This document shows positions 42,436-64,000 of a stretch of DNA of 64,000 nucleotides, one piece after another. Within the stretch, counting starts at the first letter, position 1. The number at the start of each line of letters is the position of its first letter. The stretch comes from Pavona decussata (lineage: Eukaryota). A model generated the notes under the pieces. It saw only the letters and a program-made list of their open reading frames with translations. It did no database searches and was not told the DNA's origin. The stretch is from positions 5,146,001-5,210,000 of the forward strand of contig CDRNST010000233.1 in NCBI GenBank assembly GCA_977016875.1, written 5' to 3'. The translations under genes and the position numbers were made by a program.

Positions 42436-45400
42436 ATGGCGTACCGCGGACGGGACTTGTATAACGACGATTCCGCCGCAAACCTTCTTCGTTCTGTCAG
42501 ACAACAGGTGAGAAATTAGTTTATCATTTCTACATAATGTTGATGTTATTAGAATCACCATTTACCATAGTAGTTATTTCTGCATGTGTCGTATCCATTG
42601 CATTAAATTTTGAGGTCAAGACTGGTTGCTGTTAGCTGCTTTACTCCTTGAAAGTGGCTTGCGAGTTCTATTTCCTTTCTACTACCAGAGCGTTCATGTA
42701 AGCGATTACAAATATTAAAGATAAAGCTTGTAAACATGCTAAGTTTTTTTGGTCTTATTTAACAGGAAGCTCATTTTGAAATGCTTTCTCGAGAACTGGA
42801 ACAAGAGAGAAGAAATGTTGCCCAACAGCTGGAAAAGGTAAGCCGAAAGAAAGCATTTTATGTGTGTTTTGATTACCACTGATCCATGTAGCAGCGGTTG
42901 ATCCATAAGCTACGCAGTTCATGAGGGAAGGTTAGCTTAACTATCTCTGACAAACGCATCAATCACTAAATTATTTAACGTCATTTTATTTTGAATTGTA
43001 GTGTAAATATGGCTCAGAAACGGCGAGTGTCAGTTCGATGGGAAGGTAGGATTGTATAATTTGTATTTTATGTAGAATGAATTTCAGCTTGAAATTCTCT
43101 TTAAGGTCTTGGGCTTCAAAATTCGAGTTTACGACCGATGTGTAATTTTCACACCGTTTGTTTTAATGTTAAGTGTTTCTTCGATTTCATGCTTCCAGTG
43201 AATTACGACTTGTGCTACAAGTGCCTAATATATGTATTTAAATGTAAAATCTTATGGAATCAAAAGAAGAAGTAAGCTTTATTTGATTGCCGTGGTAAAT
43301 GTAAACCATTGCTCCGGGCTTTTTTAAAGAATTATTTGTTATGAAAATAATCCTTAATGGTTCCATTTTGTAAAGCTTGGCGTATCTATAAAATTACAGT
43401 CCTTATCTGATGTAGCTTAAAATGTATCGAGTTGGATTAGAAAGAGTGTTGAGCGTATTTTGAGTACACTGACAAACGTTTCGATTCCGAATGTTTTCAT
43501 ATCTTAATTTCCTGAACGGCACTTTTCTCACGTGCCACATTCAGTGGCGTTCTTTTTGAAATAATTTGTGCATTACAATTTATGGAAATCTCATCAATGA
43601 ATTTGTATTTATATTTTATCCGGGGGTAAAACCTCGAAAGACGTATTTAAATACATCTGTAGTTGCTGGTTTTTTTGCAGTGCATTCTTCATTAAAACGT
43701 CTGTTTACATGCGTGCATTGTTCTAGGATGGCTATTTGCATGTACCTTGAGTCCAGTTCTTGAAAAATTTACGTAACTTGAATTGATCAGGCTCTTGTGA
43801 ATAGCATTTGTTTGCGGTTGCTACTTCTGGAATGTTCCCAAAATGTTAAATACATGTAATTTGATTAGGTGTCAAATTGTTGACAGGTCAATGGCCAAAC
43901 TGATCATGACTTTCCATACGATCACAAGTTCTTTTCCAGCGATCATTGTGTCTACAGCGTTAACTGTTTTAAGTTGAATTTAATAAATGCTATCAGTGGT
44001 AAATTGAACTTTATAAATGGAATAAACGAACCTCCTTTTTTCAGTACAGGGGTTTATATGATGAAAGAACAATTGCAAGTGATTTTTTTTGCGGGTTTTG
44101 CTAGCTGACATACACACAACACTACAATAGTCAACAGGGATCAAATTGCCTGCTGTGATCAGTTGACCTGACAGAGGTTACAGGAAACAGATGCAAGCAG
44201 AATGATTTTAAAATGTTCCCTCTGTGGGATTCTTGTTACTGATCACCAAGTTATGAGAAATTCTTGTTTTGGTGTCTGTACCATACCATTATGGCATGAA
44301 AACATGACAAGGGGTTTATTTAGAGTCTGGTTTCTGTCCATGGCTTGACTGTCCATACCCGTTTCCTCTCCCCCTTCGTATGGACACCTGTCGTTAAGGG
44401 TGGGGGGGGGAGGGGGTCATAACGTATTACACCTGTTACGGCTGAATACCCATGGCGTGACTACTCACCTAAATGTAAATACCGGTAACCAGATGTTCTG
44501 GGTGAAATTGACAGTTGAAGCTGCATCTTACCCAAAAAGCAACAATTTTGAGTATGAAGCTCATGACCGATTATGGCTCAAAACTTGCTAACAGCTCTGA
44601 ACACCTTGCTATTACTGATGGCTCTTTTGCTCTGCTGTATGCATGCATCTGGACAGTTGTTTTCCAGTCCTTATGGAACCTGTAGTAAAGGTGCACAATC
44701 CCATGTAACTGATGAAAACTACCCGATCTGTTTTCACGTTCTATCCTCAGTTCATTCAAAATATAAGAGTTTCTTAATTTTTTTTCATAATTTTTGTGTT
44801 CTGAGTCATTTTTGGAATTTGATGGACCTATGGTTGACAGTGTAGTCTTTTCATGATTTCAAGAAAAGCAAGGCCTCTTAGGGTTTAAATGGTAGCAAAG
44901 TATTGCCTTAGTTTTGCATTTTTACCTAATTCATGAAAAAAACTAGGACATGCATGAATATGGGAGGAAAAAGGACTTCATCTTCCCAGGCTAGACACCA
45001 AACATTAATGTTCAAAATGTATATGATTCAAATAACATATTTTTAAAAGGATTTGTGCACCATATCAGGGTTCTGACAAACTGTGTATTCTTGATGAGCT
45101 TATCAAGGTCATCAGTGGCCATGAATTTATGACATCAATTATCACCAAGCATTAATTAACCTTCCTCTCTACAGCAGTAAATCTGTTGCTTCATTTGAAA
45201 CAAATTTGCAATTGTACAACATGTATTTTTTCAGAGATTTTGACCAAATCAAAGTTAACAAGAAGCATTGAAAACACCAATTTCCCATATCATGGATAAC
45301 TACTGCATTAATTTGTAAATTCTTATTTTGATCTTTTCCCAACAAATAAACCACATCTTGCGTGTCTAAACATTAACCTTTCCTTATCTTTAGGTAAATT

Positions 45401-48400: not shown

Positions 48401-50479
48401 TCAATAATATGTTATGTTTCCTTTCAGAAACTTTAATTGCTAGTTTTGTTTTATTTTCTCTGTTGTTACATTTACTCTCACTGCACAGATCTTTGATGGT
48501 TAGTGAAAATACCTATAAATTTAATGTATGTAAAGTTTAAAAAACATGTGGATATTTGCATCCTATACTGAAGACATGTTTCATTTGCCACACTGCCATA
48601 AGGAGAGTTGACACAGTTATCTTATTCATAAGGCAATGATTTTGTGTCAAATACATATTTGTGCCATTTTGTCCATTGTCAGAAGTTAAATTCATATTTT
48701 ACATGTTCACACGGGCCAGTGTTGTCATGGTTTATCTTGTGAGGCATATATTATAATTTTGTTCTTTTTTAGGACTATTCTGACCCTTTGTATTTTTGTT
48801 TTCAGGAAAGTACTTCAAGAGCGAGGCTTGTCTGACTCAAGGTACTTAATGATTTAATGGTATTTGTTCTCAATAAAAACAAATACTTTAAGTTTGAAAG
48901 CTATTGAACTGGTAGGGTTTTTTTTTTAGGAACATATTCTTTTTTGCTGCTGTAAACATTGACAGTATAAAAATTCATTCCTCTCTAGACTGTAGATATA
49001 AATTATGAAAGGCAACTTTTGGTAGTACAAGAAATCAGTAGGATTTCATGATATTAACTCTTACTCCTAGAATGATGTATAAAAAATGAAATATCAGGTT
49101 TTATAAACTCTGTAATTATACTATAAATTCAAAGCAACTAGCACTTAATAAGAATTTTATATGAAGAGTTAAAAGTTAAAATGGAGTATATGAATTGATA
49201 TAATATTTAACCGTCTCGGGGTGAAAAGGTTAAGAATTATTAATACTGACATCAAAAACACAAATGGCAGACAGTCTAGCGCAGCTCAAAGTTGAAACAG
49301 GTGCGAAAATTGTCTCAGGTAGTCATATGCTACTTATGTCAATGTGATGTACTGTATAAGCTGCAGGGTGTACTTCACTGTATTGTGTTTTCTCTGGCTT
49401 CTCATCTGCTGCTGTCCTTTGAATATCCCTGAATCGGTTTCAGACTAAAAACACCATTCTGTATGTTCACACAATTATTGTGAATAAACTCTCAGGAGGA
49501 AGGACAAAGACGTGAGGTTTTAAAATAATGATAAGTCACTATATTGTTTGCTTTTCTTCGTATTGTTCAACGTCTGTTTTCACCATTTTCCGATGACCAT
49601 GATAAGATTTTGTTGTGCTCAGCTCAGCAGGAAATGCTCTATTTGCCCTTTCCTTGGACAATTTTCTTCATGGCGTGAGTTAATTATTCTAAAAGGAGGC
49701 CAAGGTTACCTTTGGAATGTCAAACAGCTTAGAAAAATTATGAAATAAATATTATAGGAATTCAGCAAACAAAACTAAGAATGAAGTGAATATTTTGTCA
49801 ATAAAGATTCCATAAGGTAAGCTCAATGTATTCCAAAATAGCTGCTTCATTGAGTCTTACACTTGAGTCACAACGAAATGATATGCAACTGGTAGACAGC
49901 ACACTGATAAGCAGTATAATTTGACAGATTTATATGAGACATTATCAGAAGAGTAACATACAACATTACATGTAAATATAAATATTTTTGCGTGGTTTAT
50001 AACTGTGTGGGGAAAGCAGATCTTGGTAAAGGTTATTGGAATCCAGAAATGACACAAGAGGTAACCTTGCATTTTTCAGACATAAAATTATTAAGCTTAA
50101 ATTTGAGGGAAAATGCCAAATGCCAAATTCGTATTTTAACATTTTTTGGAATAATTTTTAAGTTGCTTATAAATAATTATCTTTGAAAACATGTATGGTT
50201 ATGCCCAATTTTCTTTTTGGATTCCAATAGCCCTGGCTAAGATCTGGTTTTACTGCATAGTCATAAAGTGCGCTAAAATGCATGTCTCTTTGTAATAGGA
50301 GGTACTTATAAGTAATAAACCTCATTGTTTGTTGGGATTGGTTTCAGGGATGAGCAAGACCCTCTTTGCAACAGGAGTTTAATTGACGGTAAGAGTGCCA
50401 TAACAGTACCACGCTCAAATGCACTAATGAGTCAGGACTGGGAAAAGGATCTTATGGAAGCAGGTGGGTATAGGGCTGT

Positions 50480-50527
<48 letters not shown>

Positions 50528-53500
50528 TATTTATAACAGTGTTTTACAGGGTGCTCTCTCACTGCATGGTGGTTTTCAGAGAGGCCCTGTATATAAAAAT
50601 TACCAACCAATAGAGATTTAATTACAATAGTTAAAATCTACTCTGACTACTAGATACATATATAATAAAAACTTGACGTATAAATACAATATGTTAGGTA
50701 CGAAATTCAAAAAGGATAACATGGATAAATACGTAGTACATAGTAAAAGGAAACAGTGGTGGGTAAGATAGTCTTACGTTTTAAGCCACATGTTTCTTAA
50801 AGCTTCACATCCATAACAATCTTGCTTCTTTGTGAGTTAAATGACCCTACAACTGTCAAGATTGGCCCAAGAAATTTTTCAAGGGTATTCGGCTGTAACA
50901 GGTGTTAAGGGCTACAGCCCTTGTAAACTGACAGCTCTGGGCACACTATTGCATCTTACCTAATCTACTAGATTGTAAAAAACAAGCAGTCAAAATTCAA
51001 ATTTTAGACAACATTTAACATCAACCTCTCCCCCATATTTTCCCTGTAGTTCACTGGAATCAGAGGGAGCTTAATCCATTTGGCATTCTGTACTCAAATT
51101 CAACTTGATATCTGCAGAACAGCACTCTCCTGCTTTAACTGAGAGATGTTGCCATTTTGACTTATCATCAAATTCTAAGACGTGACATCAGTAGAAGTTT
51201 ACAGTGTTAATTATTGATGAGAATCTTTGTCCCAAGCATAGCATAAAAAAGCAGAGTATCTTTATTTTGGTAAATGAAAATGACTATATTGAAATGCCTA
51301 TCACAGTACGGAAAATAGGTCTCGTCAATTAGTTGCAACACGTTAAGTTTTGTTTTTCATTAATTTTTCGACTTTTTTTGTGTGTGTGTTACTAGTGATT
51401 TCTCTACCTCCCCTAAATTCTATTTGTCCTGTCTTTCATGATTGTAATAACTGTTAGTAAAAATACCTAGATTAGCTCTCACCACCTGCAGGCCAGTCTC
51501 TCTTTTTTGCTAAATTTTTGAGTTTTTGAATAAACTTGAACTTGAAACTTGAGACTTTCATTGGTGCTTAAAAACATTTCAATTGATTGTTTTTTTTATG
51601 CAGAGCTTACCCCTGGGCAAACAGTCAAGAAAGTTGTGACGAGAACAGAAGTTCGCACATTAAGAACAGTCGATGGCAAAGTGATTCAAGATACATATGA
51701 TCCTGGCAGCACTCAAACAACGGTTGAACGATACACACTAGATAACAGAGCCGTCAATGGAAATACACCAAGAGCTTTAACAAAGCAGTATGTGCCAGGC
51801 GATGAATACCGGTCACCTGGGCGCCGTGGACCTGGATCGCAGTCTTCTGTTGAGGATTACCGAAGACCCTACAGTCCTGGAAGCCAGAGTGGTCCTGGTT
51901 CAGAGGGTCGTCGGACACCCACTGCTAACAACCTGTCTGGACACACATCAGATGGCTACCAGACACCAACAGGTACATTGTTGTAATGCTCTTCATTTTA
52001 TCCCACTCTTCATTGTGGTGTTCACTGTTCTGGCGCCCTCTAAGTGTGCAGTTACCCGACAATAACGTAATTCACCATTGCCATGGCATTCATTTTTAAA
52101 CACAGAATTAAATAAAAAGCAGAGTTCATGAATGGAATCATAGTTAGATCTTGATGGATTCAGCAAAAATGAAAAGTTTTTAACTTAGATCCTTCTCAAA
52201 CTCAAGAACTATTAATAGAAGTTTCACTTTTGTTATTTTTTAAACGAAATGCATTGACGGCAGGCTATTACTACCCGATTACTATTTCAGTGTATGACAG
52301 GTCTTATACTAGAAAATAGAGCTACATGTAAAGGACCGGTGTTTTGTTGCCCATAAAAAGAACTTTAGGCTGCAAATTGTTGAGCTTGTTCATGGACAGT
52401 TTAGACCACAAACTAAAAGATGCGATTTAAAAAAAACCTCTGAGTGAATGTCAGGTCACAACTCTGTACAACAGCGAGAAGTCAAATTATATGAATTTGC
52501 TGAGTGCTGGAAAACCTCTTAAACCTCAATAAAATGTCCGGCTTGTGACTAGTGCCAAATCTTTAGGTTCTGTGTGTTTTTTCTGTTTACTACCCTAACT
52601 GTATTTCTTAGATTTGGTTTAAAGCAAAACACTCAAGACATTAATGATGATATTTCAAACACTCTTGTAACAAAAGATTAAATAAGTGTATAACATGTTT
52701 CTCTTATCCTTAGTTAAAAGCATTTTTATTATCAGATTATTAGTAATACTCAGTTGGCTTCTGGATAGTTACTTTTGTTCCAAAATAATTAAATTTGTTG
52801 ACAAGATATATATCTCTAACCTTACTTCTTTATTGATATGCCAATTATCAGTCAGAAAACCTCCTTCTTCACAAAAATCCACTGAATTGGGCAGTTACAA
52901 GTATCCATTTGTATTATGAGGCCATGCAATCAATTAATTTAACATGCTTCCAATTCATTTCTCCCCCTCACTGTAAAAATTCGTATTAATCATGTCTTCT
53001 TTTTAGGTTCAAGGCATTCTTCTCAGTCTAGTTCTGTCAGCGCTAATCCATATCGTAACAAAACTCAATCGCTACCTCGCACTTCATTGTCAACACCTGG
53101 TGGTGGAACACCATCGTCTTCAACAACAATCCCACGATCATCAAGCAGTTCTGGACGATTAAGCAGTAAGTTATAATTTGATAACATTTAAAAAATCAGT
53201 TACAGTTAAACTGTTAGTTCTCTAAAAACAAATGTAAGTTAAAGGACTTACCACACAACCAAAAGCTTCAGGATGACACCTTGTAGTCACCTTCTGCAGC
53301 TTAATAAATAGCACCACAAGAGAGTTCAACTGACAGCTGCTACATGCAAGTGCTTTAATTTAATTGGTCACACTTTAGAATCTTATCTAGTACAGCTGTA
53401 TACTCTTCACTTTGCATATATGGTTGATTTACATGTTCCTTGAACAACACAAAAAAACACTACCACAAGAGAGTCCACTAGTTGCAATCGCTTTTGTTTT

Positions 53501-56500
53501 TTTATTCCATACTCCAACTTGAACTGTAAAACACTTTAATTTACAATCTAAGTACATGATTCATTTTTTTTTTACTTCAGAAGAGAAATCCAACCTTGGG
53601 TGAATTTGTCTCCAGCAGTGTAACGTTATTAAATATTATTTGCTTCTCTTTCAATAACCTTTTCAAACAGGCTCAAGCGATGAGCAGATCAATGATTCAA
53701 TCCTTTGCATTAAGCCATTTGATATACAAAAGTTATTGGTACCAATTGTGTGGAATTTTGATGTTTATTTTAAAACAAAAGCTTGCGTTCACGATCTTGG
53801 TAAAGTGCTTTCAGTATGTACATGTAGTCAAAATGATTGTGTTCAAAATTAAAATACAATTCAATTATCCAGCTACACTTTAACAAATTTCAGACTATTG
53901 GCACAATGAATACAATTATTTTTTTGTTTTCTTTTTTAATGTACAAACAATATTTACTCTACAATGAAGAGCTGTGTTTTGTTAAACAAAAACATTGTTA
54001 AAGATTTTTTTGAGCACATACATGTAGTTTTACACACCCATTTCTGTCAAAGTGTGGTTTGAATGTCATTGGACTAAAGACAATAATATTAAGACCTTAA
54101 ACATTTTGAAAATCTCTGTCTGCTTGGTGATAGAGAAAGGAAGATAAAATAATAACTAAAAAGAAATGCTAGTGGTTGGGTTAAAATGTGTCTCTGATAT
54201 TCATTGCCTTGATTAGCAATTCCTTGTTAATCCAGGTGTGTTTCTTAATCAAAGGTGTTTATTTTTTTTATCTCATCTGTGACTTTTGTAAATTATTAAC
54301 GACAGTAGGAAATCGCGTTGGGATTCAAATTTGAAGGGACATGGATATGTGGAATACGCAGTCGTTGTTTATGAGGTTTTTTCCTTTGGTATTGCCAGAT
54401 GAAAAACCCAAAGGTATTTCACTGTGTTGGTTTGTTATTTTTCATCGAAACTCTCTTAAGAGTTTGGATTCATTCAGTAGATTTTACAGATGCATGAAAT
54501 ATTTGATGTATGACATACATACAATGCAGCTTTGTTGAGTTTTGTTTTTTAGCATTAAAGTCTTACTTGAAATTTATGTTTCTTCCAGTGTAATATACAC
54601 TTAGAATTTATTCTAAAGCTATGAGAACTTAAGTGCTGTACTTGTTATTTATAATAAGTACTTCTTTTACCATGTATTGAACTTCACTGTGTGGCAATTT
54701 CATAATAAACATGGCATGGTAGTAAAGTCATTTTCTCTTTAGATTCTTCAGAAAGTCCATATATTTTATGCCCTATTTTCTTGTGTACACGTGTAGCTTG
54801 ACATTTTTGGAAAAACTGTTGAACTTATAATACATTGCTATGATGACTGTGTCAGATTTTATGTATGGAAATTTGAAGCTGCTAATTCAATTGATTAAAA
54901 GTAAAACTTGCAAATAACAGGTGCAAAATGGAGTTAAGATTTTTTAGTTTCAGGGACAAACACGTAATGTAAGAAGAATTATGGTTTAATTTTAATCAAG
55001 ATTAGGTTAGGGACCTTCCTGTGGAACTGTTTATTATTTCTGCTGGGTAAATATAAATGTTGAGTCAGCTACTAATGTAGAGGCTACAGAGGGGTTCTAT
55101 ATAGCATGGACAGGATTGCTTTTTTGGAAATTATTTTTTTTTACTTTCTTTGTGGTATGCATTTTTATAGCCCTATATTTGGGTTGGACATTATCCATTG
55201 GCATACATGACATATTAATGGTTACTGCAATGCATTGTGGGTAAATCCAACACAGAGTGGTCTGCAGATATATTAATGATGGGATAGTACTGTGACTTTG
55301 TATTTAAATTAAATGCTTTTTATACCAAATGTGGCCAGTAAACAAGGTTTTTGAACATAAATTCTACGTTTGCTCCACATTGTCTCTCTTGACCCAAGTG
55401 TATAAATGGGTACTGGCGACACATTGCTGGGGGTAATCCTGTGATGGACTAGCATCTCATCCAGGTGGGAGTAGCAATACTCCCCTTCTCACAAAGTTCG
55501 CGTTGGCGTTAACCGCAAGGGAGCATCCTTGGTCCACTTCTATTTCTTATCTACGTAAACGACCTCCCACACTGCTTGGAGTACTGCAAAGTTGTCATGT
55601 ATGCAGACGACACTGTGTTATACTATAGTGGGAAGAGCTGCCACGAAATTGAATCGCATCTAAATGCCGACCTTGGCAAGTTAGGACATTGGTTTGATAA
55701 CAATTACCTAACTTTAAACACGTCTAAATCTAAGTTCGTACTGTTTGGCAGCAATCGCAAATTGCAAAGTTGCCATGATGTCAAGCTTGTTATGCATAAT
55801 GTTTGCCTCGAGAATTCAGATTCAATCAAGTACCTTGGCGTGAAAATTCACAAGAACATGACTTGGAATGAGCAAATCGATTCATTAATTACCAAAGTGA
55901 ATCAAAGGATTGGCCCATTGAGACGTGTCAAGCCTCTGTTACCAGTAGATGCACGGATTACACTGTATAACACTTTGATTAGTCCCCTTTTCTACTATGC
56001 TGATGTTATCTGGGGTGACAAGGATAACACTACACTTATGGGCGATTTGCAGATTCTGCAAAATAAGGCAGCAAAAGTTATCCTTGATTTGCCTGGCTAT
56101 GTCTCATCCACCGATGCACTCAAGTCACTTGGCTGGCCAACCTTGTCCCAACGTCGCCTTGTACATAGATATATGATCACTTTAAAGTATATTCATGGAC
56201 TTGTAGATTATAATTTTAATATTCTTAAGAACAGCGACATCCATTCCTATAATACCCGGAGAAAGAATGATTTCCGTCTTCCACGAGTACGAACTAACTA
56301 CGGAAAGAAGACACTCCTTTACCAGGGTATTAAGGAATGGAACCTTTTAGAACAGTCTTACAAAGACATAAAATCGTTTTTAATTTTTAAGCAACGTATC
56401 AAAGAGCGCGTTTTTAGCTAGTTTTTAATTCTTATTTCTTATTTTTATTTCTTACCGCCGACTTTGTATTTTCTACTTTTAAATAATTGTAATTTTTAAA

Positions 56501-59500
56501 ATAATTGTAAGTTTTAAATCATTTCTCAATCTACAGGGCCCCACTGAATATCACTTTCGTGATGTGGGCTCCCTGTATAAAGATTGTTATTATTATTTAT
56601 TACTATTATTATTATTATTATTACTCCTAGTAGCTTCCTGCTACAGAAACTGGGCTAATCTCCAGCCCTGTGGGCCACTTAGGCTCATAGTGTGACTTAA
56701 ATCCTAACCTTTTTCAGCATAAACACCTGTCTGAACAAATTTTAGAATGAACAGGTATTTTGGAAATTAATGTGGTCAGACAATATTTGAGGACCAAGCA
56801 CTGGTAGGAGTGATCAATTGCTGAATAGTTGAGAAACAAACCCTTTAAAGGGACCAGAAATTAATTCAAGTTAATGCATTTCTCATTTTTTTCCAGCCAC
56901 GTACAACCTCAGTATAAAAGTTGGCGACGTCAAAGGCTCAGGCACTGATGGTAATGTTTACATTCAGCTGTTTGGTGAACGTGGAAATACGGCAAAGATT
57001 CAGCTTAGGCAAGCTGGAGACACTAGGAATAAGTTTGAGAAAGGGCGGACGTACAAGTTTACAGTGGACACTGTTGATATTGGCAAGGTAGTGAAAATTG
57101 TAAAAGTAACAAATAAATAATGTTTCCAAGGTTGCTCAAACTTGATCATTTTTCTCACGGTTCTGTAGCATAGGTGTGGATTGGGAAGTTCCCAAGGCTC
57201 TCTCTCTTTTGCCATGTTGGTGATGATGTCATCTGCCCATGCAAAATCTGTGGAGGATGCCAGATATGTGTCCTAAGATCCATTAATTTGTTGATTGTTC
57301 CTTTCAATCTTGACTCCAATCTGTATTACAAGTGCGTTCTTTCTGCGTCAAAGGCAATAAATTTCAATTTTGGAAGTTTGTAATGTCAGTAGGTACTGCG
57401 AGTTTCTTCCTATTAGTATAGTTATAGGTAGTCATAAAAAGACTAAATTTAAAGTTATAGTCACTGTGATTATATTATTCAAAAGAGATTTTCTGAAGCT
57501 GAAGCTTGCCAAACGGCTGTTAACTGTTCAAAATAATTTGATGCAACTTAAGATTTCTTGTTTTGGCATGGTTTGCAGGTTGATAGAATCAAGTTAAGTC
57601 ATGACCATACAGGTTATGGATCCGGTTTCTTTGTGGAGGAAGTTGAAGTGGAGGTTCCTGCTCGTCAGGATAGAGTCAAGTTTCCGTGTCGCTGTTGGCT
57701 GGCGCAGGATGTTGACGATGGTAAAATTGAGAGGGAGATGTTCGCAATAACCCCTTTACCAAGTAAGTCAACAAAATGGTTTCTTGTTTGCTTCTTTGTT
57801 AAAGGGGAAGTATCACGGAAATTTGATGTCATCTCAAAACCCAAAAATGTTTGTCAACAACAGAAACAGAAACAAAAAAAATAATTGTCAAGTTTTGTTA
57901 TAAATTATCACCCCATTAGTGCCTCTGGCCAGAGACAGAGTAGGTAGGAATGGATTGAATCTTGAAAAATGTAAAGCTAATGTTTTTCAAGTTTTCGTTT
58001 TTTTGTTTCCAAAATGTGCTAGAACAGAGTATGAGTTGTTCCTGTCAAGAATTTAGTTGATTGCTCTCCTTTCGTTGTTCTATAGAATTATTTTGTAGCA
58101 AAGTGAAGGTCTTATTTCACCATTTTTAACAAAAGAGGTCAAAAATCCCATGATACTTTCCCTTTAAATAAGTAGTAAAACACTGTAATGCCTTTATTTG
58201 GGTTGGTGCAATTACTGACATTTAAAATGCTGTCATAGTTTTTTTGTGGCCAAAGAAAATAAAAAGGAAATTTAAAAAATAGAGATAAATTTGGTTGAAT
58301 TGTTTGAAGTATGAAGAGATCATTTATGTTCCATGTGATGCGTTTTGGTCAAAGTTTGTCCCAAATTATGTTTACTTCAATTGAACATATATTTGTACAT
58401 GCTGAATGTTATTTCTCAGCCACACAACTATGGTACAGCAAATAAAGGACACGCACAACACATGTTCTGACAACAAGAACAAGTACATGTACATTTAATT
58501 GCAACTGAAATGAAACAGAAAATTTTGTTACTTAAAAGCACCATAATCTCACAGACTAGCTGGGTGTCGGTGGGTGGGAAAGCTTTTGTCTGATTGGGAA
58601 GAAGACAAAAACTGGATGTCATAACCTAGCATGAAAGTATGGTCTCACTTGTCATTCAGTGTGGGAACCTTGTGTCTTGAACCCTTTTGGAGGCTCAGGC
58701 AGCATGAAGACTATTTTTATCATTTTTTTTGCTTAAATTCTTATTTCAGACACCTCCTACACAATGTCAGTCAAACTTGGCGATGTTCTTAGTCCAGATA
58801 CCAATCTTTACGTTCAGCTGTTTGGAGAAAAAGGGGAAACAAGCAAAATAATGCTGCGACCTGTTGGTTCCTCACTTAACAAGTTTGAGAAAGGCAGAAC
58901 GTACAAGTTTACTGTTGAGACTGTGAATATCGGACGGGTGAGTCATTAAGTTGATCAGTCCATTCAGTCACTTGTTTTGTTAGTCAGTCAGTCAGTCAGT
59001 CAGTCAGTCAGTCAGTCATTCATTCAGTCAGGCAGGCAGGCAGGTAGTCAGTCAGTCAGTCGGTCGGTCGGTCAGACAGCCAGTATATCAGGCAGCTGCA
59101 GGCAGTCAGCCAGTCAGTCAATCAGGATTCAGTCAGTCAGTCAGACTGTCTGTCTGTCAGTCAGTCAGTCAGTCAGTCAGTCAGTCGGTCTGTCATGTGG
59201 TCAGTTGGTCTATCAGCCAGCCAGTCAGTCAGTCAGTCAGTCAGTCAGTCAGTCAGTCAGTCGGTCGGTCAGACAGCCAGTATATCAGGCAGCTGCAGGC
59301 AGTCAGCCAGTCAGTCAATCAGGATTCAGTCAGTCAGTTAGTTTTGGTCAGTCAGACTGTCTGTCAGTCAGTCAGTCAGTCGGTCGGTCTGTCATGTGGT
59401 CAGTTGGTCTATCAGCCAGCCAGTCAGTCAGGCAGTCATTTGGTCAGGCAGTCAGTCAATCAGTCAGTCAGTCAGGATGTCTATTTAATTTTCTGCAAAT

Positions 59501-61265
59501 ATTTCACTTTAAGATTGACAGACTGCGGATTGGCCATGACAGCAAAGGAGATGGGAAGGGCATATTTGTGGAAGAGGTAGAGGTAGCTCCAGCTGAAGGA
59601 GAGCGTGCTATCTTTCCTTGCTACTGCTGGCTGGCTGAGGGCAAAGGTGACAAGAAAATGGAGCGAGACATACTGCCAGGTCAACCAAGACCACCACGAC
59701 CAAGTGAGTGTTAAACTGACATTTTTTAGGAGAGATCTATAACCTTCATTTTGTTGTGAAAATAAATGTTTTCTCTAACTATCAACATTTATTTTGGAGT
59801 ATTTTCATGCCAAGGATGTGTGTAGAGTACACAGTGGTCCAGAAGTGTGCAAACTTTGCATTGAAGTTGTAGCATTGCTTAACTCCAGCAGATGTAACAT
59901 TACCTTTTACTGATAGGGACTTTATTTCTCGACAGATACCTCATATCATTTAGCAGTGAAAACTGGAGATATGCTGACAGCTGGTACAGACGCTAACGTG
60001 TATTTCCAGTTGCTTGGTGATGAAGGAGAAACCGAGAAAATCCAGCTACGCCAAGGTGGTAAAGCAGAAAAGAGATTTGAGAAGGGGAGAGTTGATAAGT
60101 TTATCGTGGAAACTGTGGATGTTGGAACGGTATGTTAGTTCTTAATTTATTTGTTCACAGATCTAAGGTCTTTTTATGCTGACATGTTTTGTTGTTATGT
60201 ATCTGAAGAGGCAGCAGTTGCTTATGTCAGAGTGAAACAAAACAAGAAAAGAAACTATGGTTCTTGTTATGTGATCAACTTAATTTTTTAATATGACCAT
60301 TACAAGTCAGACCTTACAAGACAAGTGAAGATTTACTCTCTCTTATTGACATATGTATAAGGTTCCCTCTTTTTATTAACAAAACCAGTTCCTGCTGGCA
60401 ACTAGAGAGACCCTGGTAACAAGGACCTTCTACACACTCTTAGCCCTTTTTAAAACCCTTGAGGCAAAATGACATTTTGTCCAGATCCAGGACTACAAAC
60501 TCAATGTCCATGTATGACTTGTGAGTGTATTTAATAACTGATATAATTATAAATGAGAAAACTAATGGCTTTGAGGTAAATGGGCTTAAAACGTAAAACT
60601 TTAAAAGTTCAAAAATGTCCCAATCCTCGTGTATATTAGGTATACCGCTAAACTATATAGGTTATTTTGCATTTCTCCACATGTTCATTAATGTGAGAGC
60701 TGTCTTAAGACCCACAACTGCTAGGGGGAAAAAGTTGAAAAGTTATGGGGGTGGTCAACCGTATCACATATGGGAAGGGGTTACGTTCTCATCCTATGAG
60801 AGATGAGTAGATCTTCACAAGACCATCTTGGTGTCAAAAATGCATAGAAATCTGTCAAATCTTGACAGAGTTATAGTATTCTGTGCCAATTGGCACTCTT
60901 AGGGATTAAAGAGTTAAGCTGGTTGGAAAATGAACACTTGTTCGCTGTTCTAACAGGTTCAAAAGTTGCGCATTGGACATGACAACAATGGATCAGCTCC
61001 TGGATGGTATCTCGAAGAAGTCGCTGTTGATGTGCCTGCCCATAATGAACATTTCATCTTCCCTTGCCATCGATGGCTTGCCAAAAATGAAGATGATGGC
61101 AAAATAGAGAGAGATCTAGTGCCAGGTATTCAATGTTTGCTTGGCCATAAGTGTCAGAAGATAAAATGTTGTTCAATTCAATTTGTTTCTTTTTCCTTGT
61201 CTCTGTAAGTTGTAAGCTTATTTAAGATAGAGGAAATTAGCTGATTAAGATCGATCGATTGATGG

Positions 61266-61348
<83 letters not shown>

Positions 61349-63697
61349 CAGTCAGGCAGTCAAGCTTTCTTGAAAGAGGAGAATTAAAAAGAACATAGCA
61401 CTTAAAAGGCTGTGGTCTCCAGGCAGCCAGTCACAAATTTTCTCTTGGTCTTTGAAGCTTGCCAAGAAATGTCACTCAGCTAAACCTACCAGCTGTTAAC
61501 TTCCCAAAACTTGATGATTTTCTCTGCCTGTGAACAAATCCTATGACTTGCTCAAATGTTGCTATTTTTTATTCCATGTTGAGTTTTTTATTAATATTCT
61601 GTGATATCAGGTTCCCCTGTCAGTTCTGGTGCAACTTCTCCAAGCAGGACTACGATTACGACAACCACAGAGCAAACAACCAGAACAGAGAGTCAGAAAG
61701 TCCCACCTCCTGTTGCTAAGAAACCTGATGAACGATATGGTACCCCCACAAAGAAGGTCATTACTGAAGAACTAAGATACACTACAGTGCCACCGCCTCA
61801 GAAAACAGTCATTGAGGAGATGCGTTACACCACACCCCCTGCCAAAAGAACTGTCATTGAGGAAGAATATAGGTTAGTAGCCTGCCTAATCCAAGGGTTT
61901 TTGTTTTACAGCGTACAAAATGCTTCTATGCAGCAATTGCTTACTTGCAGGGTTTCCACACTTGGCACAGAACTGTCTCACTGTGAAAATTGCATACCTT
62001 TTCAGGCATTATTTTGGAAATTTATGTTCTGTGTTTTTTAATTTCAGATACTCTACCCAAAGAAAAGAGCCAGCCCCCACACCTCCCCAGAGAAAAATCA
62101 TTGAAGAAAGGATGGTGATGAAAGAGACTCCCCCGCCTGTGCAGGGAGCCCCACCCATGAGGCCAGCAGAACCCAAACAGCGCATCACACAGGAAGAACT
62201 GACGGTTGAAGAAGTACGCAGACAGGACTACTCTACACCACCTCCTGCAAATGAGTATCAGTACCATGAGGAAATGCTTCCACCGCCTGATGAATATCAT
62301 TTTGAGGAGAAGAGGACGGAGATATCTGCACCTGCTCCAGAGGCCATGGACAGCAGAAAAAGTGAGTTTATAGAATTATATCCTGTGTAGCAAGCGTTTC
62401 TATTAGGGTTTTGTGTCTTTTTCAGTTTTTTACTGCGCGAAAAACCCGCAAAAGCCCACGGAAAAGCTTGCTATGCAGGCTAATAGAATTGCTATAAAAG
62501 CAACAGTGTCCAGGTTCGGTTGTAGACAAAATCAGGGTGGGGCAGTGTTCCAGGTAACTGTCAAAGTCAGGGAGTCAAGGAAGAATTTTGAAGGGTCAAC
62601 CATTTGGTTCTCTCCAAATCTTCTTCAGTTTACCAGTCCATTCATTTTGTTGGGTCAGGAAGCCAGCTTTCTTGGGTTTTTGATCTGAGACGCATCTCTT
62701 GTATGGAACACTGGTGGGGTGATCTGTCTCTTCTCAGAGCACTGATGTCTTCTAAATGCCGGTTTCCCTAACTTGTGCAATGTTTTGTGTTCTCTTTTAG
62801 TTGTTTTGCTGTAGTGTTGTAAAAAAGCTGAAAAGGTCGCCATGTTTGCAGAGTGCTTTTCCAAGGGCTGTTGTACTGGAATACGAAAAAAAAAAAAATA
62901 ACATCTGAATATAGGAACTATGACAACCGTTGTAAATGTAATACTTTATATCAATTATAAAAAGTCATAACGTACATGTGAAAGAAAAGAGATGTGTAAC
63001 TGGTGATAATTTGTTTTACTCCTGATTATATTGAAAAAAAATCGAGGAAGGATGCAAGCTAGTTTCTCTCCCTTTGTCAAAATTACATTTGTTTGTCTGT
63101 TGTTTTGTTGAATTTTTAATGTATTCTTTTACTCTTACAAAACAAAACTGAAAACTTTGTGAGCTTATACAGCCCTCGTTGTTTGTGGATTTGTTGTTCA
63201 TTGTTCGGTTTATCTAGATAACTTCTAACGATCTGTATTTTTTCTTGCAGTTGTTGCGTATCAGCTGTGCCTTAAAATGGGAGATGTGCTTGGTGAAGGA
63301 ACAGAAGGAAATGTGTTCATTCAGCTCATTGGCGACAAGGGCATGACAGAGCAAATACAGCTACGACAAGCTGGAAATTCCAAGATACGCTTTGAGAAAG
63401 GAAGAACCTACAAGTTCACTGTTGAAACAATCGATATTGGAAAAGTACGATTTCAACAATTTAAAACTGTTTGAGTTCTGTGGATCTGTAGTTGGGTCAC
63501 TCACATTTCTCCTTTGTTTTAGATTGAAAAGGTAAGTGTCAGTCATGACAGCCGGCAGCCCACCACAGGGTGGTACTTGGAGGAGGTCAGTGTTGATGTG
63601 CCATCACGTGGGGACCACACCGTATTTCCCTCACACTGTTGGTTGGCTTCAGGGAAAGGTGATGGCAAAATTGTCAGAGACTTTGTCTCAAAACCAT
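42436..63697 (+). CDS. p120/delta-catenin-family gene with multiple PLAT (LH2) domains inserted in its N-terminal region (partial; ~991 codons in window, continues past 64000)
   Basis: Exons 42436-42507, 42766-42837, 43002-43045, 45457-45576, 48806-48841, 50348-50388, 51604-51972, 53007-53165, 56897-57087, 57579-57762, 58750-58937, 59514-59703, 59936-60129, 60957-61125, 61611-61872, 62048-62361, 63251-63444, 63523-63697. All GT-AG, phase-consistent and stop-free. The N-terminus [49 protein letters not shown]...LVDSCLKVLQERG parallels CTNND2/PKP4 as I recall them ([47 protein letters not shown]...LVDSCIRSLQESG). TVKKVVTRT resembles p120. ARM repeats are not reached in the window. Confidence 0.8.
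49980..50281. mobile_element. Palindromic MITE, family copy 2
   Basis: atatttttgcgtggtttataact ... agtcataaagtgcgctaaaatg; a diverged relative of 37528-37812. Confidence 0.65.
50478..50830 (-). mobile_element. L2-like LINE 3' remnant with (AAAT)n tail
   Basis: (tatt)n at 50478-50526 lies next to acagggtgctctctc...gagaggccctgt. This stem-loop resembles the acagggccc...ccctgt 3' hairpin of the L2 copy at ~56533-56577. Confidence 0.55.
55372..56690 (+). mobile_element. SINE body split in two by the LINE insertion (55372-55483 and 56628-56690)
   Basis: ...gtataaatgggtactggcg...gggggtaatcctgtgatggactagcatctcatccagg...agtagcaatactcc [LINE] tagtagcttcctgctacagaaactggg... The joined halves read as a SINE body I recognise as common in metazoans. 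Confidence 0.6.
55484..56621 (+). mobile_element. 5'-truncated L2/CR1-group non-LTR retrotransposon (RT C-terminal half)
   Basis: [19 protein letters not shown]..., [27 protein letters not shown] and KEWNLL motifs (ORF to 56421), with a frameshift just before PQGS. It has a 3' hairpin, a (TAT)n tail, and a 6-bp TSD TACTCC (55478-55483 / 56622-56627). Confidence 0.92.
56897..57762 (+). other. PLAT domain 1 (two exons)
   Basis: [29 protein letters not shown]...FEKGRTYKF...DIGK / VDRIKLSHD...[19 protein letters not shown]; LOXHD1-type PLAT consensus. Confidence 0.9.
57803..58163. mobile_element. Kolobok-type MITE (TTAA TSD)
   Basis: ttaa|aggggaagtatcacgg ... ccatgatactttcccct|ttaa; purine-purine terminus with TTAA duplication. 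Confidence 0.8.
58750..59703 (+). other. PLAT domain 2 (two exons)
   Basis: [10 protein letters not shown]...[13 protein letters not shown]...FEKGRTYKF / IDRLRIGHD...FPCYCWLA...ERD. Confidence 0.9.
58960..59476. repeat. (TCAG)n degenerate microsatellite with ~197-bp internal duplication
   Basis: gtcagacagccagtatatcaggcagctgcagg block at 59071 and again at 59268, embedded in tcag runs. Confidence 0.9.
59936..61125 (+). other. PLAT domain 3 (two exons, most canonical)
   Basis: [31 protein letters not shown]...FEKGRVDKF / [20 protein letters not shown]...[20 protein letters not shown]. Confidence 0.93.
61266..61348. repeat. (ATCA)n microsatellite
   Basis: About 20 perfect units. Confidence 0.95.
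62379..62482. mobile_element. Short TAGCCTG-family hairpin element with ~9-bp TSD
   Basis: atagaatta|tatcctgtgtagcaagcgtttc ... aaagcttgctatgcaggcta|atagaattg. Confidence 0.75.
63251..63697 (+). other. PLAT domain 4 (two exons)
   Basis: [29 protein letters not shown]...FEKGRTYKF...DIGK / IEKVSVSHD...GWYLEEV...FPSHCWLA...DGKIVRDF. Confidence 0.9.
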
Positions 63698-63800
63698 GTA
63701 AGTAACATTGATTTTGTACGAAAACCAACCAGAACCTTGAGATAGCCTGCAAAGCAAGCATTTCTGTGAAGTTTTCTGCACTAAAAAGCCTACTTCCGTA

Positions 63801-63944
63801 TAGCCTGCGTAGCAGTCGTTTCCGTTTGCTTCAAGCCAAGCTGGGCAAGCGCGCGAGGGCATTGGGCAAAAAGTTTTGCCCAATGCCCTCGCGCGCTTGC
63901 CCCGCTTCGCTTGAAGGAAACGGAAACGACTGCTACGCAGGCCA
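63801..63944. mobile_element. Near-perfect 144-bp hairpin element with 9-bp TSD
   Basis: acttccgta|tagcctgcgtagcagtcgtttccg ... cggaaacgactgctacgcaggcca|acttccgta. The centre gcaagcgcgcgagggcattgggcaaaa-ag-ttttgcccaatgccctcgcgcgcttgc is perfectly paired. Confidence 0.88.
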
Positions 63945-64000
63945 ACTTCCGTATTACAGATGCGCGCGAAATGGGGTCCCAATTTCCGCGCGGTGAAACA

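What the first reader, a model, noticed from the sequence alone, without database searches (positions are those of the whole stretch)
51604..63697. Every PLAT is a symmetric phase 1-0-1 two-exon cassette: exon shuffling and a possible splice-controlled PLAT count
Seen: each PLAT enters in phase 1, has an internal phase-0 intron at the same position (after ..DIGK/NIGR/DVGT), and exits in phase 1. Exons 51604-51972 and 53007-53165, and the pair 61611-62361, are also phase 1-1. Any subset can therefore be skipped without frameshift; for example 51972->61611 would give a conventional PLAT-free catenin N-terminus. Established: 1-1 modules are the classic units of exon shuffling, and p120 catenins are heavily regulated through N-terminal isoforms. 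Inference: tissue-specific isoforms with 0 to 4 or more PLATs.
Basis: partly seen in the sequence, partly recalled or inferred. Interest (0 to 1): 0.75.

Follow-up and report, generated by a model that had tools for sequence, protein, structure and literature searches.

The report
Exon-shuffled PLAT cassettes in coral p120-catenin
A coral-type p120-catenin gene carries six PLAT domains, each built from the same two-exon, frame-neutral cassette, which most closely matches one repeat of the LOXHD1-like gene; this is a clean case of exon shuffling, but whether splicing varies the PLAT number could not be tested.

Summary
Observation confirmed and extended. All four PLATs in the window, and two more just downstream, are two-exon cassettes with phases 1/0/1. 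The internal intron sits after the D-I/V-G-x codon. Conserved DNA blocks in four other genomes stop at the predicted exon ends.

The gene is a true p120/delta-catenin. A p120 N-terminal coiled coil lies upstream and a p120-type ARM domain lies downstream of the PLAT array.

Exon shuffling is well supported. Genome-wide, the best non-catenin match of all 12 half-exons (two checked genome-wide) is one repeat of a LOXHD1-like PLAT array. That repeat alone shares the same intron position and phases. A paralog 0.8 Mb away has 15 such cassettes, and Nematostella has them too.

Indirect evidence leans towards constitutive inclusion:
- six PLATs are kept one-to-one across species;
- dN/dS is about 0.03, as low as in the ARM core;
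- synonymous divergence is not reduced;
- intron flanks are not conserved;
- one skip (PLAT4 to ARM) creates a TAG.

A conserved candidate alternative first exon (54341-54413, phase-1 donor) upstream of PLAT1 points to N-terminal isoforms by another route.

The scan had already noted this chimeric architecture on the same stretch.

The parts
42763..42840 (+). Exon segment encoding the p120-subfamily N-terminal coiled coil. This is the 5' part of the same gene, upstream of the finding.
   Evidence: 73% identical over 26 aa to residues 40-65 of Ptychodera catenin delta-2-like (E 1e-10). 60% identical to plakophilin-4 residues 43-67. Lies in a DNA block conserved in L030.
51604..51972 (+). Exon N1 (phase 1 to 1, 369 nt). 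Ser/Pro/Tyr-rich regulatory-region exon starting with a TVKKVV-type motif.
   Evidence: Splice sites. 25 homologous genomic ORFs at 48-100% identity; in the nine-sequence alignment built from them, conservation starts and stops at the predicted exon ends. DNA block 51601-51975 conserved in L030.
53007..53165 (+). Exon N2 (phase 1 to 1, 159 nt), Ser-rich.
   Evidence: Splice sites. DNA block 53002-53193 conserved in L030. No Pfam family.
53915..54340 (+). Conserved non-coding block directly upstream of the candidate alternative first exon. Possibly a promoter or 5'UTR.
   Evidence: 73% identical to L030 over about 500 nt and to L026 from 54175 on, while the surrounding intron does not align. 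Stops in all three frames. Single copy in the genome. No Rfam match.
54341..54413 (+). Candidate alternative first exon: ATG, 24 codons and one extra base, then a GT donor in phase 1. It fits the phase-1 acceptor of PLAT1a (junction G+CC = Ala).
   Evidence: ATG, open frame and G|GT donor are conserved in four genomes, each with an in-frame stop 3-9 codons upstream. Similarity ends at the donor. Variable columns by codon position are 6/4/16. There is no transcript evidence.
56897..57087 (+). PLAT1 first half (phase 1 to 0).
   Evidence: PF01477 positions 1-61, 47.4 bits. Splice sites. 100% amino-acid identity in L025 and L026 despite dS above 1.
57579..57762 (+). PLAT1 second half (phase 0 to 1).
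   Evidence: PF01477 positions 65-110, 27.8 bits. 100% amino-acid identity in L025 and L026.
58750..58937 (+). PLAT2 first half (phase 1 to 0). Divergent type lacking the G-T-D motif.
   Evidence: PF01477 positions 1-57, 21.5 bits, below the cut-off on its own. Ortholog identity 95-98%.
59514..59703 (+). PLAT2 second half (phase 0 to 1).
   Evidence: PF01477 positions 65-110, 18.9 bits. Orthologs 90-94% identical. AG and GT sites.
59936..60129 (+). PLAT3 first half (phase 1 to 0).
   Evidence: Acceptor read. PLAT match. Orthologs 97% identical.
60957..61125 (+). PLAT3 second half (phase 0 to 1).
   Evidence: PLAT match. 61% identical to the LOXHD1-like repeat C27:917184-917351, its best match in the genome outside itself.
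61611..61872 (+). Linker exon L1 (phase 1 to 2), Thr/Pro-rich.
   Evidence: Splice sites. 19 homologous genomic ORFs share the same exon ends. Omega about 0.1-0.2.
62048..62361 (+). Linker exon L2 (phase 2 to 1), Pro/Glu-rich.
   Evidence: Splice sites. DNA block 62042-62367 conserved in L026.
63251..63444 (+). PLAT4 first half (phase 1 to 0).
   Evidence: PF01477 positions 1-61, 34.1 bits. Orthologs in L023-L026.
63523..63697 (+). PLAT4 second half (phase 0 to 1). It ends in a T that completes a conserved Cys codon with PLAT5a.
   Evidence: Joint PLAT match across the 78-nt intron, 45.8 bits. Junction table. The final T is kept in L023-L026.

Best explanation
The stretch is the middle of a single gene of at least 35 kb (G000:C233, about 5,188,700-5,223,300, + strand). 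The gene encodes a p120/delta-catenin whose N-terminal regulatory region has been interrupted by six LOXHD1-type PLAT domains.

Each PLAT is a two-exon cassette with phases 1/0/1. The most likely history is as follows. One such cassette, already present in that form as a repeat of the LOXHD1-like PLAT array, was copied into a phase-1 intron of the ancestral p120 gene. It was then multiplied by tandem duplication. Only a cassette that is symmetric in phase can be inserted or duplicated without breaking the frame, so the phase pattern is a footprint of how the array was built.

The array is old, being shared with the sea anemone Nematostella. It has since been frozen: six PLATs in one-to-one orthology, each as constrained as the ARM core. 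I therefore take the PLAT exons to be mainly constitutive.

N-terminal isoform diversity, if present, more likely comes from a conserved alternative first exon at 54341-54413. That exon would start the protein just before PLAT1 and drop the p120 coiled coil.

Shown: exon structure, homology, conservation and selection. Inferred: direction of transfer, constitutive splicing, use of the alternative first exon, and any membrane-binding role of the PLATs.
For: Phases and splice sites. Two more cassettes, then p120-type ARM exons downstream. ARM exon best matches catenin delta-1 structure 3L6X (E 9e-20). p120 coiled coil upstream.

Only two p120-type loci exist in the genome, and both carry PLATs.

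Exon ends coincide with cross-species conserved blocks. Pooled omega is 0.027-0.043 for PLAT, 0.05 for ARM and 0.12-0.14 for the linker; pS for PLAT is 0.46-0.60 against 0.46-0.57 for ARM. PLAT1 is 100% identical at dS above 1.

The same internal site is present in all 47 cassettes examined, including the 15 of the paralog and the 6 of Nematostella. Outer phase-1 sites are also present in nearly all.

The LOXHD1-like repeat is the best non-catenin hit of all 12 half-exons, genome-wide for the two tested, and has identical phases. It sits on a very short branch at the base of the catenin PLATs. Recent tandem copies inside the paralog have 98/97 support.

Seven full-length p120 relatives from other phyla have no PLAT.
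Against: There are no transcript data of any kind, so every splice junction is predicted and constitutive inclusion is inferred.

The trees of about 60-residue half-domains are poorly resolved (basal split 58/88). The direction LOXHD1 to catenin therefore rests mainly on taxonomic breadth, which I could sample only thinly.

Symmetric exons and a family known for many isoforms (a hemichordate relative has at least 24 predicted isoforms) leave room for some exon skipping.

Full-length coral proteins seem to be absent or withheld from the protein libraries. Absence of an annotated PLAT-ARM protein there therefore means little.
Confidence: 0.6

Rival explanations
1. One reading: the symmetric cassettes are used as regulated alternative exons, so that tissues or stages make p120 isoforms with different numbers of PLATs, possibly none.
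For: All whole cassettes, N1, N2 and the linker pair are frame-neutral, and 35 of 36 possible phase-1 junctions are open. p120-family genes have many isoforms elsewhere; Ptychodera has isoforms up to X24. These two PLAT-bearing genes are the only p120 genes in the genome, so a conventional PLAT-free p120 could only arise by splicing or alternative starts.
Against: No junction evidence could be obtained. The six PLATs are kept one-to-one in L025/L026 and PLAT4-6 in L023/L024. Omega is as low as in the ARM core and synonymous divergence is not reduced. No conserved intron flanks or extra conserved exons were found between 56.0 and 70.0 kb. Skipping PLAT5-6 gives TAG. A PLAT-free product needs two separate multi-exon skips.
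Confidence: 0.2
2. No transfer between genes took place. The DIGK phase-0 intron and the phase-1 borders are ancestral features of this PLAT subtype, kept in one LOXHD1-like repeat and in the catenin PLATs and lost or moved elsewhere. Alternatively, the transfer ran from the catenin gene into the LOXHD1-like array.
For: The half-domain trees do not resolve the base. For PLAT3b the LOXHD1-like repeat scores higher than any other catenin PLAT, so it lies within the catenin diversity.
Against: PLAT domains had to enter a p120 gene somehow, because p120 relatives in seven other animals lack them. The repeat sits in the middle of an array of at least 17 repeats, and its neighbours have other intron positions. 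It has the shortest branch in the a-half tree (0.097), as expected of a slowly evolving source.
Confidence: 0.12
3. The PLAT array and the ARM part are two adjacent genes, as in the old Nematostella annotation, which has an 804-residue PLAT model followed by a 476-residue ARM model.
For: The Nematostella record GCA_000209225.1 has two separate models 576 bp apart. I have no transcript that joins them.
Against: p120-specific sequence lies on both sides of the PLATs on the same strand. The last PLAT exon has no stop before its phase-1 donor, and the first ARM exon starts in phase 1 only 584 nt away. The adjacency and both exon ends are conserved in five other genomes. The N-terminal exons would have nothing to splice to.
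Confidence: 0.04

Closest known systems
p120-catenin / delta-catenin subfamily (CTNND1, CTNND2, ARVCF, PKP4)
   Same: The ARM exon matches the catenin delta-1 crystal structure best, then plakophilins. The N-terminal coiled coil is 73% identical to a hemichordate delta-catenin. The ARM exon series aligns to p120 relatives.
   Different: Six PLAT domains and a Pro/Thr-rich linker lie between the N-terminal region and the ARM domain. None of seven full-length relatives scanned has a PLAT. No paper in the library links PLAT with p120 or delta-catenin.
LOXHD1 (protein made of PLAT repeats only)
   Same: The PLATs are of the LOXHD1 type. One repeat of the genome's LOXHD1-like array (C27:915729-917376) shares the exact exon structure and is 40-61% identical to every catenin half-exon.
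   Different: The LOXHD1-like gene has no ARM domain, and its other repeats are split at other positions or not at all. I did not test orthology of that array to vertebrate LOXHD1.
Class 1-1 exon-shuffling modules (Patthy's rule; from general knowledge)
   Same: The module is bounded by phase-1 introns, has been inserted into a phase-1 intron of an unrelated gene, and has been multiplied in tandem.
   Different: The module is two exons with an internal phase-0 intron. It is a cytoplasmic domain in a cytoplasmic protein, whereas the classic cases are extracellular domains. Here a donor-like copy is still identifiable in the same genome.
FN3-bearing p120 catenins (the architecture I recall for C. 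elegans JAC-1)
   Same: This is another lineage in which extra globular domains were added N-terminal to the p120 ARM domain. Two relatives in the library carry four FN3 domains before ARM (P0046, P0085).
   Different: The added domain is different (FN3, not PLAT). I did not look up the names or exon structure of those proteins.
Vertebrate p120 N-terminal isoforms made by alternative start sites (from memory, not checked here)
   Same: The candidate alternative first exon at 54341-54413 would give a protein without the coiled coil, as the shorter vertebrate p120 isoforms lack it.
   Different: Here the evidence is conservation only. The exon would join a PLAT array rather than the regulatory region.

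Membership tests
PLAT/LH2 domain (PF01477) | Match to the Pfam model above the curated cut-off (23 bits) | tested here: met
   First halves alone score 47.4 bits (PLAT1) and 34.1 bits (PLAT4). PLAT1b scores 27.8. PLAT4 read across its short intron scores 45.8. The PLAT2 halves score 21.5 and 18.9, each below the cut-off on its own.
PLAT/LH2 domain (PF01477) | Complete eight-stranded beta-sandwich fold | not tested
   This needs the two exons joined.
p120/delta-catenin subfamily | ARM repeats closest to catenin delta-1 and plakophilins rather than beta-catenin | tested here: met
   Exon A5 against 3L6X catenin delta-1 gives E 8.8e-20, then plakophilin-2 and plakophilin-1. Pfam Arm hits lie at C233:5216608 and 5220196.
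p120/delta-catenin subfamily | N-terminal coiled coil upstream of the regulatory region | tested here: met
   Window 42763-42840 against Ptychodera catenin delta-2-like residues 40-65: 73% identity, E 1e-10. Against plakophilin-4: 60%.
p120/delta-catenin subfamily | Binding of the cadherin juxtamembrane domain (key groove residues) | not tested
   I did not map the residues exon by exon. Binding itself needs an experiment.
Exon-shuffled symmetric module | Same intron phase at both borders, and module length a multiple of three | tested here: met
   All six cassettes are phase 1 to 1, with lengths 375, 378, 363, 369, 369 and 357 nt.
Exon-shuffled symmetric module | Homologous module with the same intron positions in an otherwise unrelated gene | tested here: met
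   LOXHD1-like repeat C27:915729-915922 + 917184-917376 has the same three intron positions and phases, and is the best non-catenin match.
Regulated cassette (alternatively spliced) exon | Reads or transcripts for both the included and the skipped junction | not testable with these tools
All database proteins found were unspliced genomic ORFs.
Regulated cassette (alternatively spliced) exon | Conserved intron sequence flanking the exon and reduced synonymous divergence (typical but not obligatory) | tested here: not met
   Conserved blocks end within 2-75 nt of the exon ends. pS is 0.46-0.60 in PLAT exons against 0.46-0.57 in ARM exons.
Alternative first exon | Conserved start codon, open frame and splice donor compatible with the downstream exon | tested here: met
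   Window 54341-54413: ATG, 24 open codons and a phase-1 G|GT donor in four genomes, with upstream in-frame stops. Variable sites by codon position are 6/4/16.
Alternative first exon | Transcription start and spliced transcript observed | not testable with these tools

The most novel reading that the evidence does not exclude
In hexacorals the only p120-type catenins carry arrays of LOXHD1-type PLAT domains. The number of PLATs per molecule would be set by regulated skipping of whole phase-symmetric cassettes, combined with an alternative first exon. Cells could then tune how many membrane- or partner-binding modules sit on the cadherin-bound catenin.
Probability: 0.12. Interest if true: 0.7.

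Novelty: new variant of a known kind. Interest (0 to 1): 0.5.

Why it matters
p120-catenin controls how long classical cadherins stay at the cell surface. Its N-terminal region is where regulation happens in well-studied animals.

Here both p120-type genes of a coral-type genome have that region filled with 6 and 15 PLAT domains, and a sea-anemone homologue also carries a PLAT array. PLAT domains bind membranes or partner proteins in other contexts. In LOXHD1 they help to keep a mechanosensitive channel at its site (PMC11387651).

The exon structure shows how this was built. A donor-like cassette is still visible in the same genome, which makes this an unusually clear example of exon shuffling of a cytoplasmic domain.

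The work also gives concrete, testable predictions about isoforms: a list of junctions and a candidate alternative first exon. These apply to Nematostella and corals, where the cadherin-catenin complex is already studied experimentally.

Tried and rejected
I went on with other tools on the same window by reference, and no tool called any part human-like.

(2) Spliced transcripts in the protein collections. Word searches with the ORFs around L1, PLAT2b and N1, and the closest hits of the exhaustive search with an ARM exon, returned only genomic ORFs that read into introns.

(3) An annotated full-length PLAT-ARM protein. None was among the 150 best representatives; seven long ones were scanned.

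(4) Similarity of N1 and L1 to a hemichordate delta-catenin. It is only weak and compositional (E 0.02-0.03), so it is inconclusive.

(5) N-terminal exons shared between the two paralogs. None was detected.

(6) The conserved block 53915-54444 as a repeat or a known RNA. It is single copy with no Rfam hit. Reading its 3' part as an internal cassette exon was rejected: in-frame stops lie 3-9 codons upstream of the ATG, and no acceptor in a compatible phase is conserved.

(7) A second LOXHD1-like repeat with an intron near the same place. Its intron is 5 nt away and in phase 1, so it is not the same intron.

(8) Splice-site strength. By eye the donors are a mixture of strong and weak with no pattern, and they were not scored.

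There is therefore no full-length search and no PLAT structure prediction.

One slip: the script contained one typed 72-nt string that was not used. The counts came from the stored files.
Full report
WHAT WAS CHECKED. The finding claims three things. Each PLAT domain between 51604 and 63697 is a two-exon cassette with intron phases 1/0/1. Neighbouring exons are also phase-symmetric. This implies exon shuffling and possibly a splice-controlled number of PLATs on a p120-catenin. I rebuilt the exon model from the sequence and extended it into the rest of the genome (the window is G000:C233:5146001-5210000). I then compared it with related loci and looked for transcript evidence.

Candidate splice sites around the open segments give one consistent model on the + strand (table).
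- N1 51604-51972 and N2 53007-53165 are both phase 1 to 1.
- PLAT1 is 56897-57087 / 57579-57762.
- PLAT2 is 58750-58937 / 59514-59703.
- PLAT3 is 59936-60129 / 60957-61125.
- The linker pair is 61611-61872 / 62048-62361, with phases 1, 2, 1.
- PLAT4 is 63251-63444 / 63523-63697.
Each PLAT enters in phase 1, is split in phase 0 right after DIGK, NIGR, DVGT or DIGK, and leaves in phase 1. Pfam puts the first halves on PLAT model positions 1-61 and the second halves on 65-110.

THE EXON ENDS ARE CONFIRMED BY COMPARISON. Related genomes have saturated synonymous sites (dS about 0.7-1.6). Against them, DNA similarity is confined to blocks that begin and end within a few bases of the predicted exon ends, the longest overhang being about 75 nt. 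Protein-level conservation of N1 and L1 also stops exactly at the predicted ends.

THE GENE. Downstream of the window there are two more cassettes with the same phases: PLAT5 at C233:5211171-5211361 / 5212003-5212180 and PLAT6 at 5213273-5213466 / 5214527-5214689. Ten ARM-region exons follow, ending at about 5223309. One ARM exon matches the crystal structure of catenin delta-1 best (E 9e-20), then plakophilins. Upstream, window 42763-42840 encodes the p120-family N-terminal coiled coil, 73% identical to a hemichordate delta-catenin with E 1e-10. The PLAT array is therefore flanked on both sides by p120-specific sequence, so it is an insertion inside a p120 gene. With two different queries the genome shows only two p120-type loci: this one and a paralog at C233:4.36-4.40 Mb. 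The paralog carries 15 cassettes of the same kind before its ARM domain.

CONSERVATION AND SELECTION. Contigs from other, unnamed organisms hold the same gene (ENA assemblies ERZ25067889, ERZ25071797, ERZ25072724 and ERZ25071802). L025 and L026 have all six PLATs, L1 and L2 in the same order. L023 and L024 have PLAT4-6 followed by ARM. A Tara metagenome contig and the Nematostella vectensis genome (DS469507.1) hold the counterpart of the paralog. In Nematostella it is annotated as two adjacent models, one PLAT and one ARM. Earlier notes of this scan call the genome coral-type, and these hits agree with that.

In all 47 cassettes examined, the GT follows the homologous codon and the AG precedes the second half. 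The outer phase-1 sites are present too.

Pooled dN/dS is 0.027-0.043 for PLAT exons, about 0.05 for ARM exons and 0.12-0.14 for the linker. Synonymous differences are as frequent in PLAT exons (pS 0.46-0.60) as in ARM exons (0.46-0.57). PLAT1 is 100% identical in protein over 124 residues at dS above 1.

ORIGIN. A PLAT-only array of at least 17 repeats lies at C27:903-938 kb. All 12 half-exons of the catenin gene have their best match in that array in one and the same repeat, C27:915729-915922 + 917184-917376. For the two halves tested genome-wide it is the best match outside the two catenin genes. That repeat is itself a 1/0/1 cassette with DIGK|gt inside and CCA-A|gt at its end, as in PLAT1 and PLAT2. 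The other repeats are unsplit or split elsewhere; the closest case is 5 nt away and in phase 1.

Trees of the half-domains are weakly resolved. They put this repeat on a very short branch at the base of the catenin PLATs and show recent tandem copies within the paralog. p120 relatives from seven other animals have no PLAT. The simplest history is transfer of one LOXHD1-type cassette into a phase-1 intron of p120, followed by tandem amplification before the anemone-coral split. The phase symmetry is what made each of these steps frame-neutral.

SPLICE-CONTROLLED PLAT NUMBER. This could not be tested directly. All related proteins in the collections were ORFs called on unspliced genomic DNA.

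By arithmetic, whole cassettes, N1, N2 and the linker pair can be skipped in frame. Half-cassettes cannot, being 2 and 1 mod 3. Of the 36 possible phase-1 junctions, one (PLAT4b to the first ARM exon) reads TAG.

The indirect signs do not favour regulated cassettes:
- a fixed set of six orthologous PLATs;
- constraint equal to the ARM core;
- no loss of synonymous divergence;
- no conserved intron flanks and no extra conserved exons between 56 and 70 kb.
None of this excludes some skipping. I put regulated PLAT-number control at about 0.2 or less.

A DIFFERENT ROUTE TO N-TERMINAL ISOFORMS. The N2-PLAT1 intron contains a single-copy block (53915-54444) conserved in three other genomes, where the rest of the intron does not align. 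Its last 73 nt (54341-54413) form an ATG, 24 open codons and a G|GT donor in phase 1. All of these are kept in four genomes, with in-frame stops just upstream. Variation is concentrated at third codon positions (6/4/16). Similarity ends at the donor.

This looks like an alternative first exon with its promoter region. Spliced to PLAT1a, it would give a protein without the coiled coil, N1 and N2 but with all PLATs. It is a prediction from conservation only.

KNOWN OR NEW. Exon shuffling of 1-1 modules is textbook, and p120 and LOXHD1 are well known. I found no paper in the searchable library that links PLAT with p120 or delta-catenin. The scan itself had already noted the chimeric architecture on this same stretch (note s1-480549). 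What this report adds is listed here:
- the full cassette count;
- the donor-like LOXHD1 repeat;
- the 15-cassette paralog;
- the Nematostella counterpart;
- the selection data;
- the junction table;
- the candidate alternative first exon.

LIMITS. There is therefore no full-length protein search and no structure prediction of a whole PLAT domain. All junctions are predicted. Organism names of the related contigs are unknown except for Nematostella. The LOXHD1-like array was not tested for orthology with vertebrate LOXHD1.

VERDICT. The exon-shuffling interpretation is well supported and sharpened. The alternative-splicing interpretation is untested and, on indirect evidence, less likely than constitutive inclusion. 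I rate it a new variant of known kinds, with interest 0.5.

Noticed in passing
window 53915-54444 and 54848-54893: Single-copy conserved non-coding sequence in the N2-PLAT1 intron. It is a block of about 430 nt upstream of the candidate alternative first exon, plus a separate 46-nt element that is 89-91% identical in two other genomes. There is no Rfam match.
   Followed up: partly
window 42714-43056, 43867-43917, 45445-45646, 48777-48847, 48971-49024, 49598-49667, 50345-50465: Further blocks conserved with L030 upstream of N1. The first holds the p120 coiled-coil exon. The others are candidate 5' exons or regulatory elements of the same gene, and the start codon was not located.
   Followed up: partly
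G000:C233:4359942-4402359 (loci L012-L018): Paralogous p120-type gene with 15 PLAT cassettes, all split at the same phase-0 site. Four of them (about 4368435-4374260) are recent tandem copies. Its counterpart is present in a Tara metagenome contig (L027) and in Nematostella (L029).
   Followed up: partly
L029 (Nematostella vectensis GCA_000209225.1, DS469507.1:450705-477263): The public annotation splits the homologous gene into an 804-residue PLAT model and a partial 476-residue ARM model (EDO49843.1) only 576 bp apart. This is probably one gene.
   Followed up: partly
window 55576-56421: A 281-codon open frame resembling the C-terminal part of a non-LTR retrotransposon reverse transcriptase (judged by eye, not scanned), on the + strand inside the N2-PLAT1 intron.
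   Followed up: no
window 58950-59480 and 61241-61395: Short tandem repeats inside introns that stay open in all three frames (translating as SQSV... and INQS...). They inflate ORF lists but are not coding.
   Followed up: no
window 63800-63945: Palindromic element of about 145 bp that matches itself on both strands and has at least 90 matches across the genome. It looks like a MITE-type repeat.
   Followed up: no
G000:C233:5216727/5216728 (locus L004:6727): The second ARM exon appears to use a GC-AG intron (AAG|gcaagt). The next exon continues in phase 0.
   Followed up: no
proteins P0046 and P0085: Two p120-type relatives in the library carry four FN3 domains before the ARM repeats. This is an independent case of domain accretion at the p120 N-terminus.
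   Followed up: no
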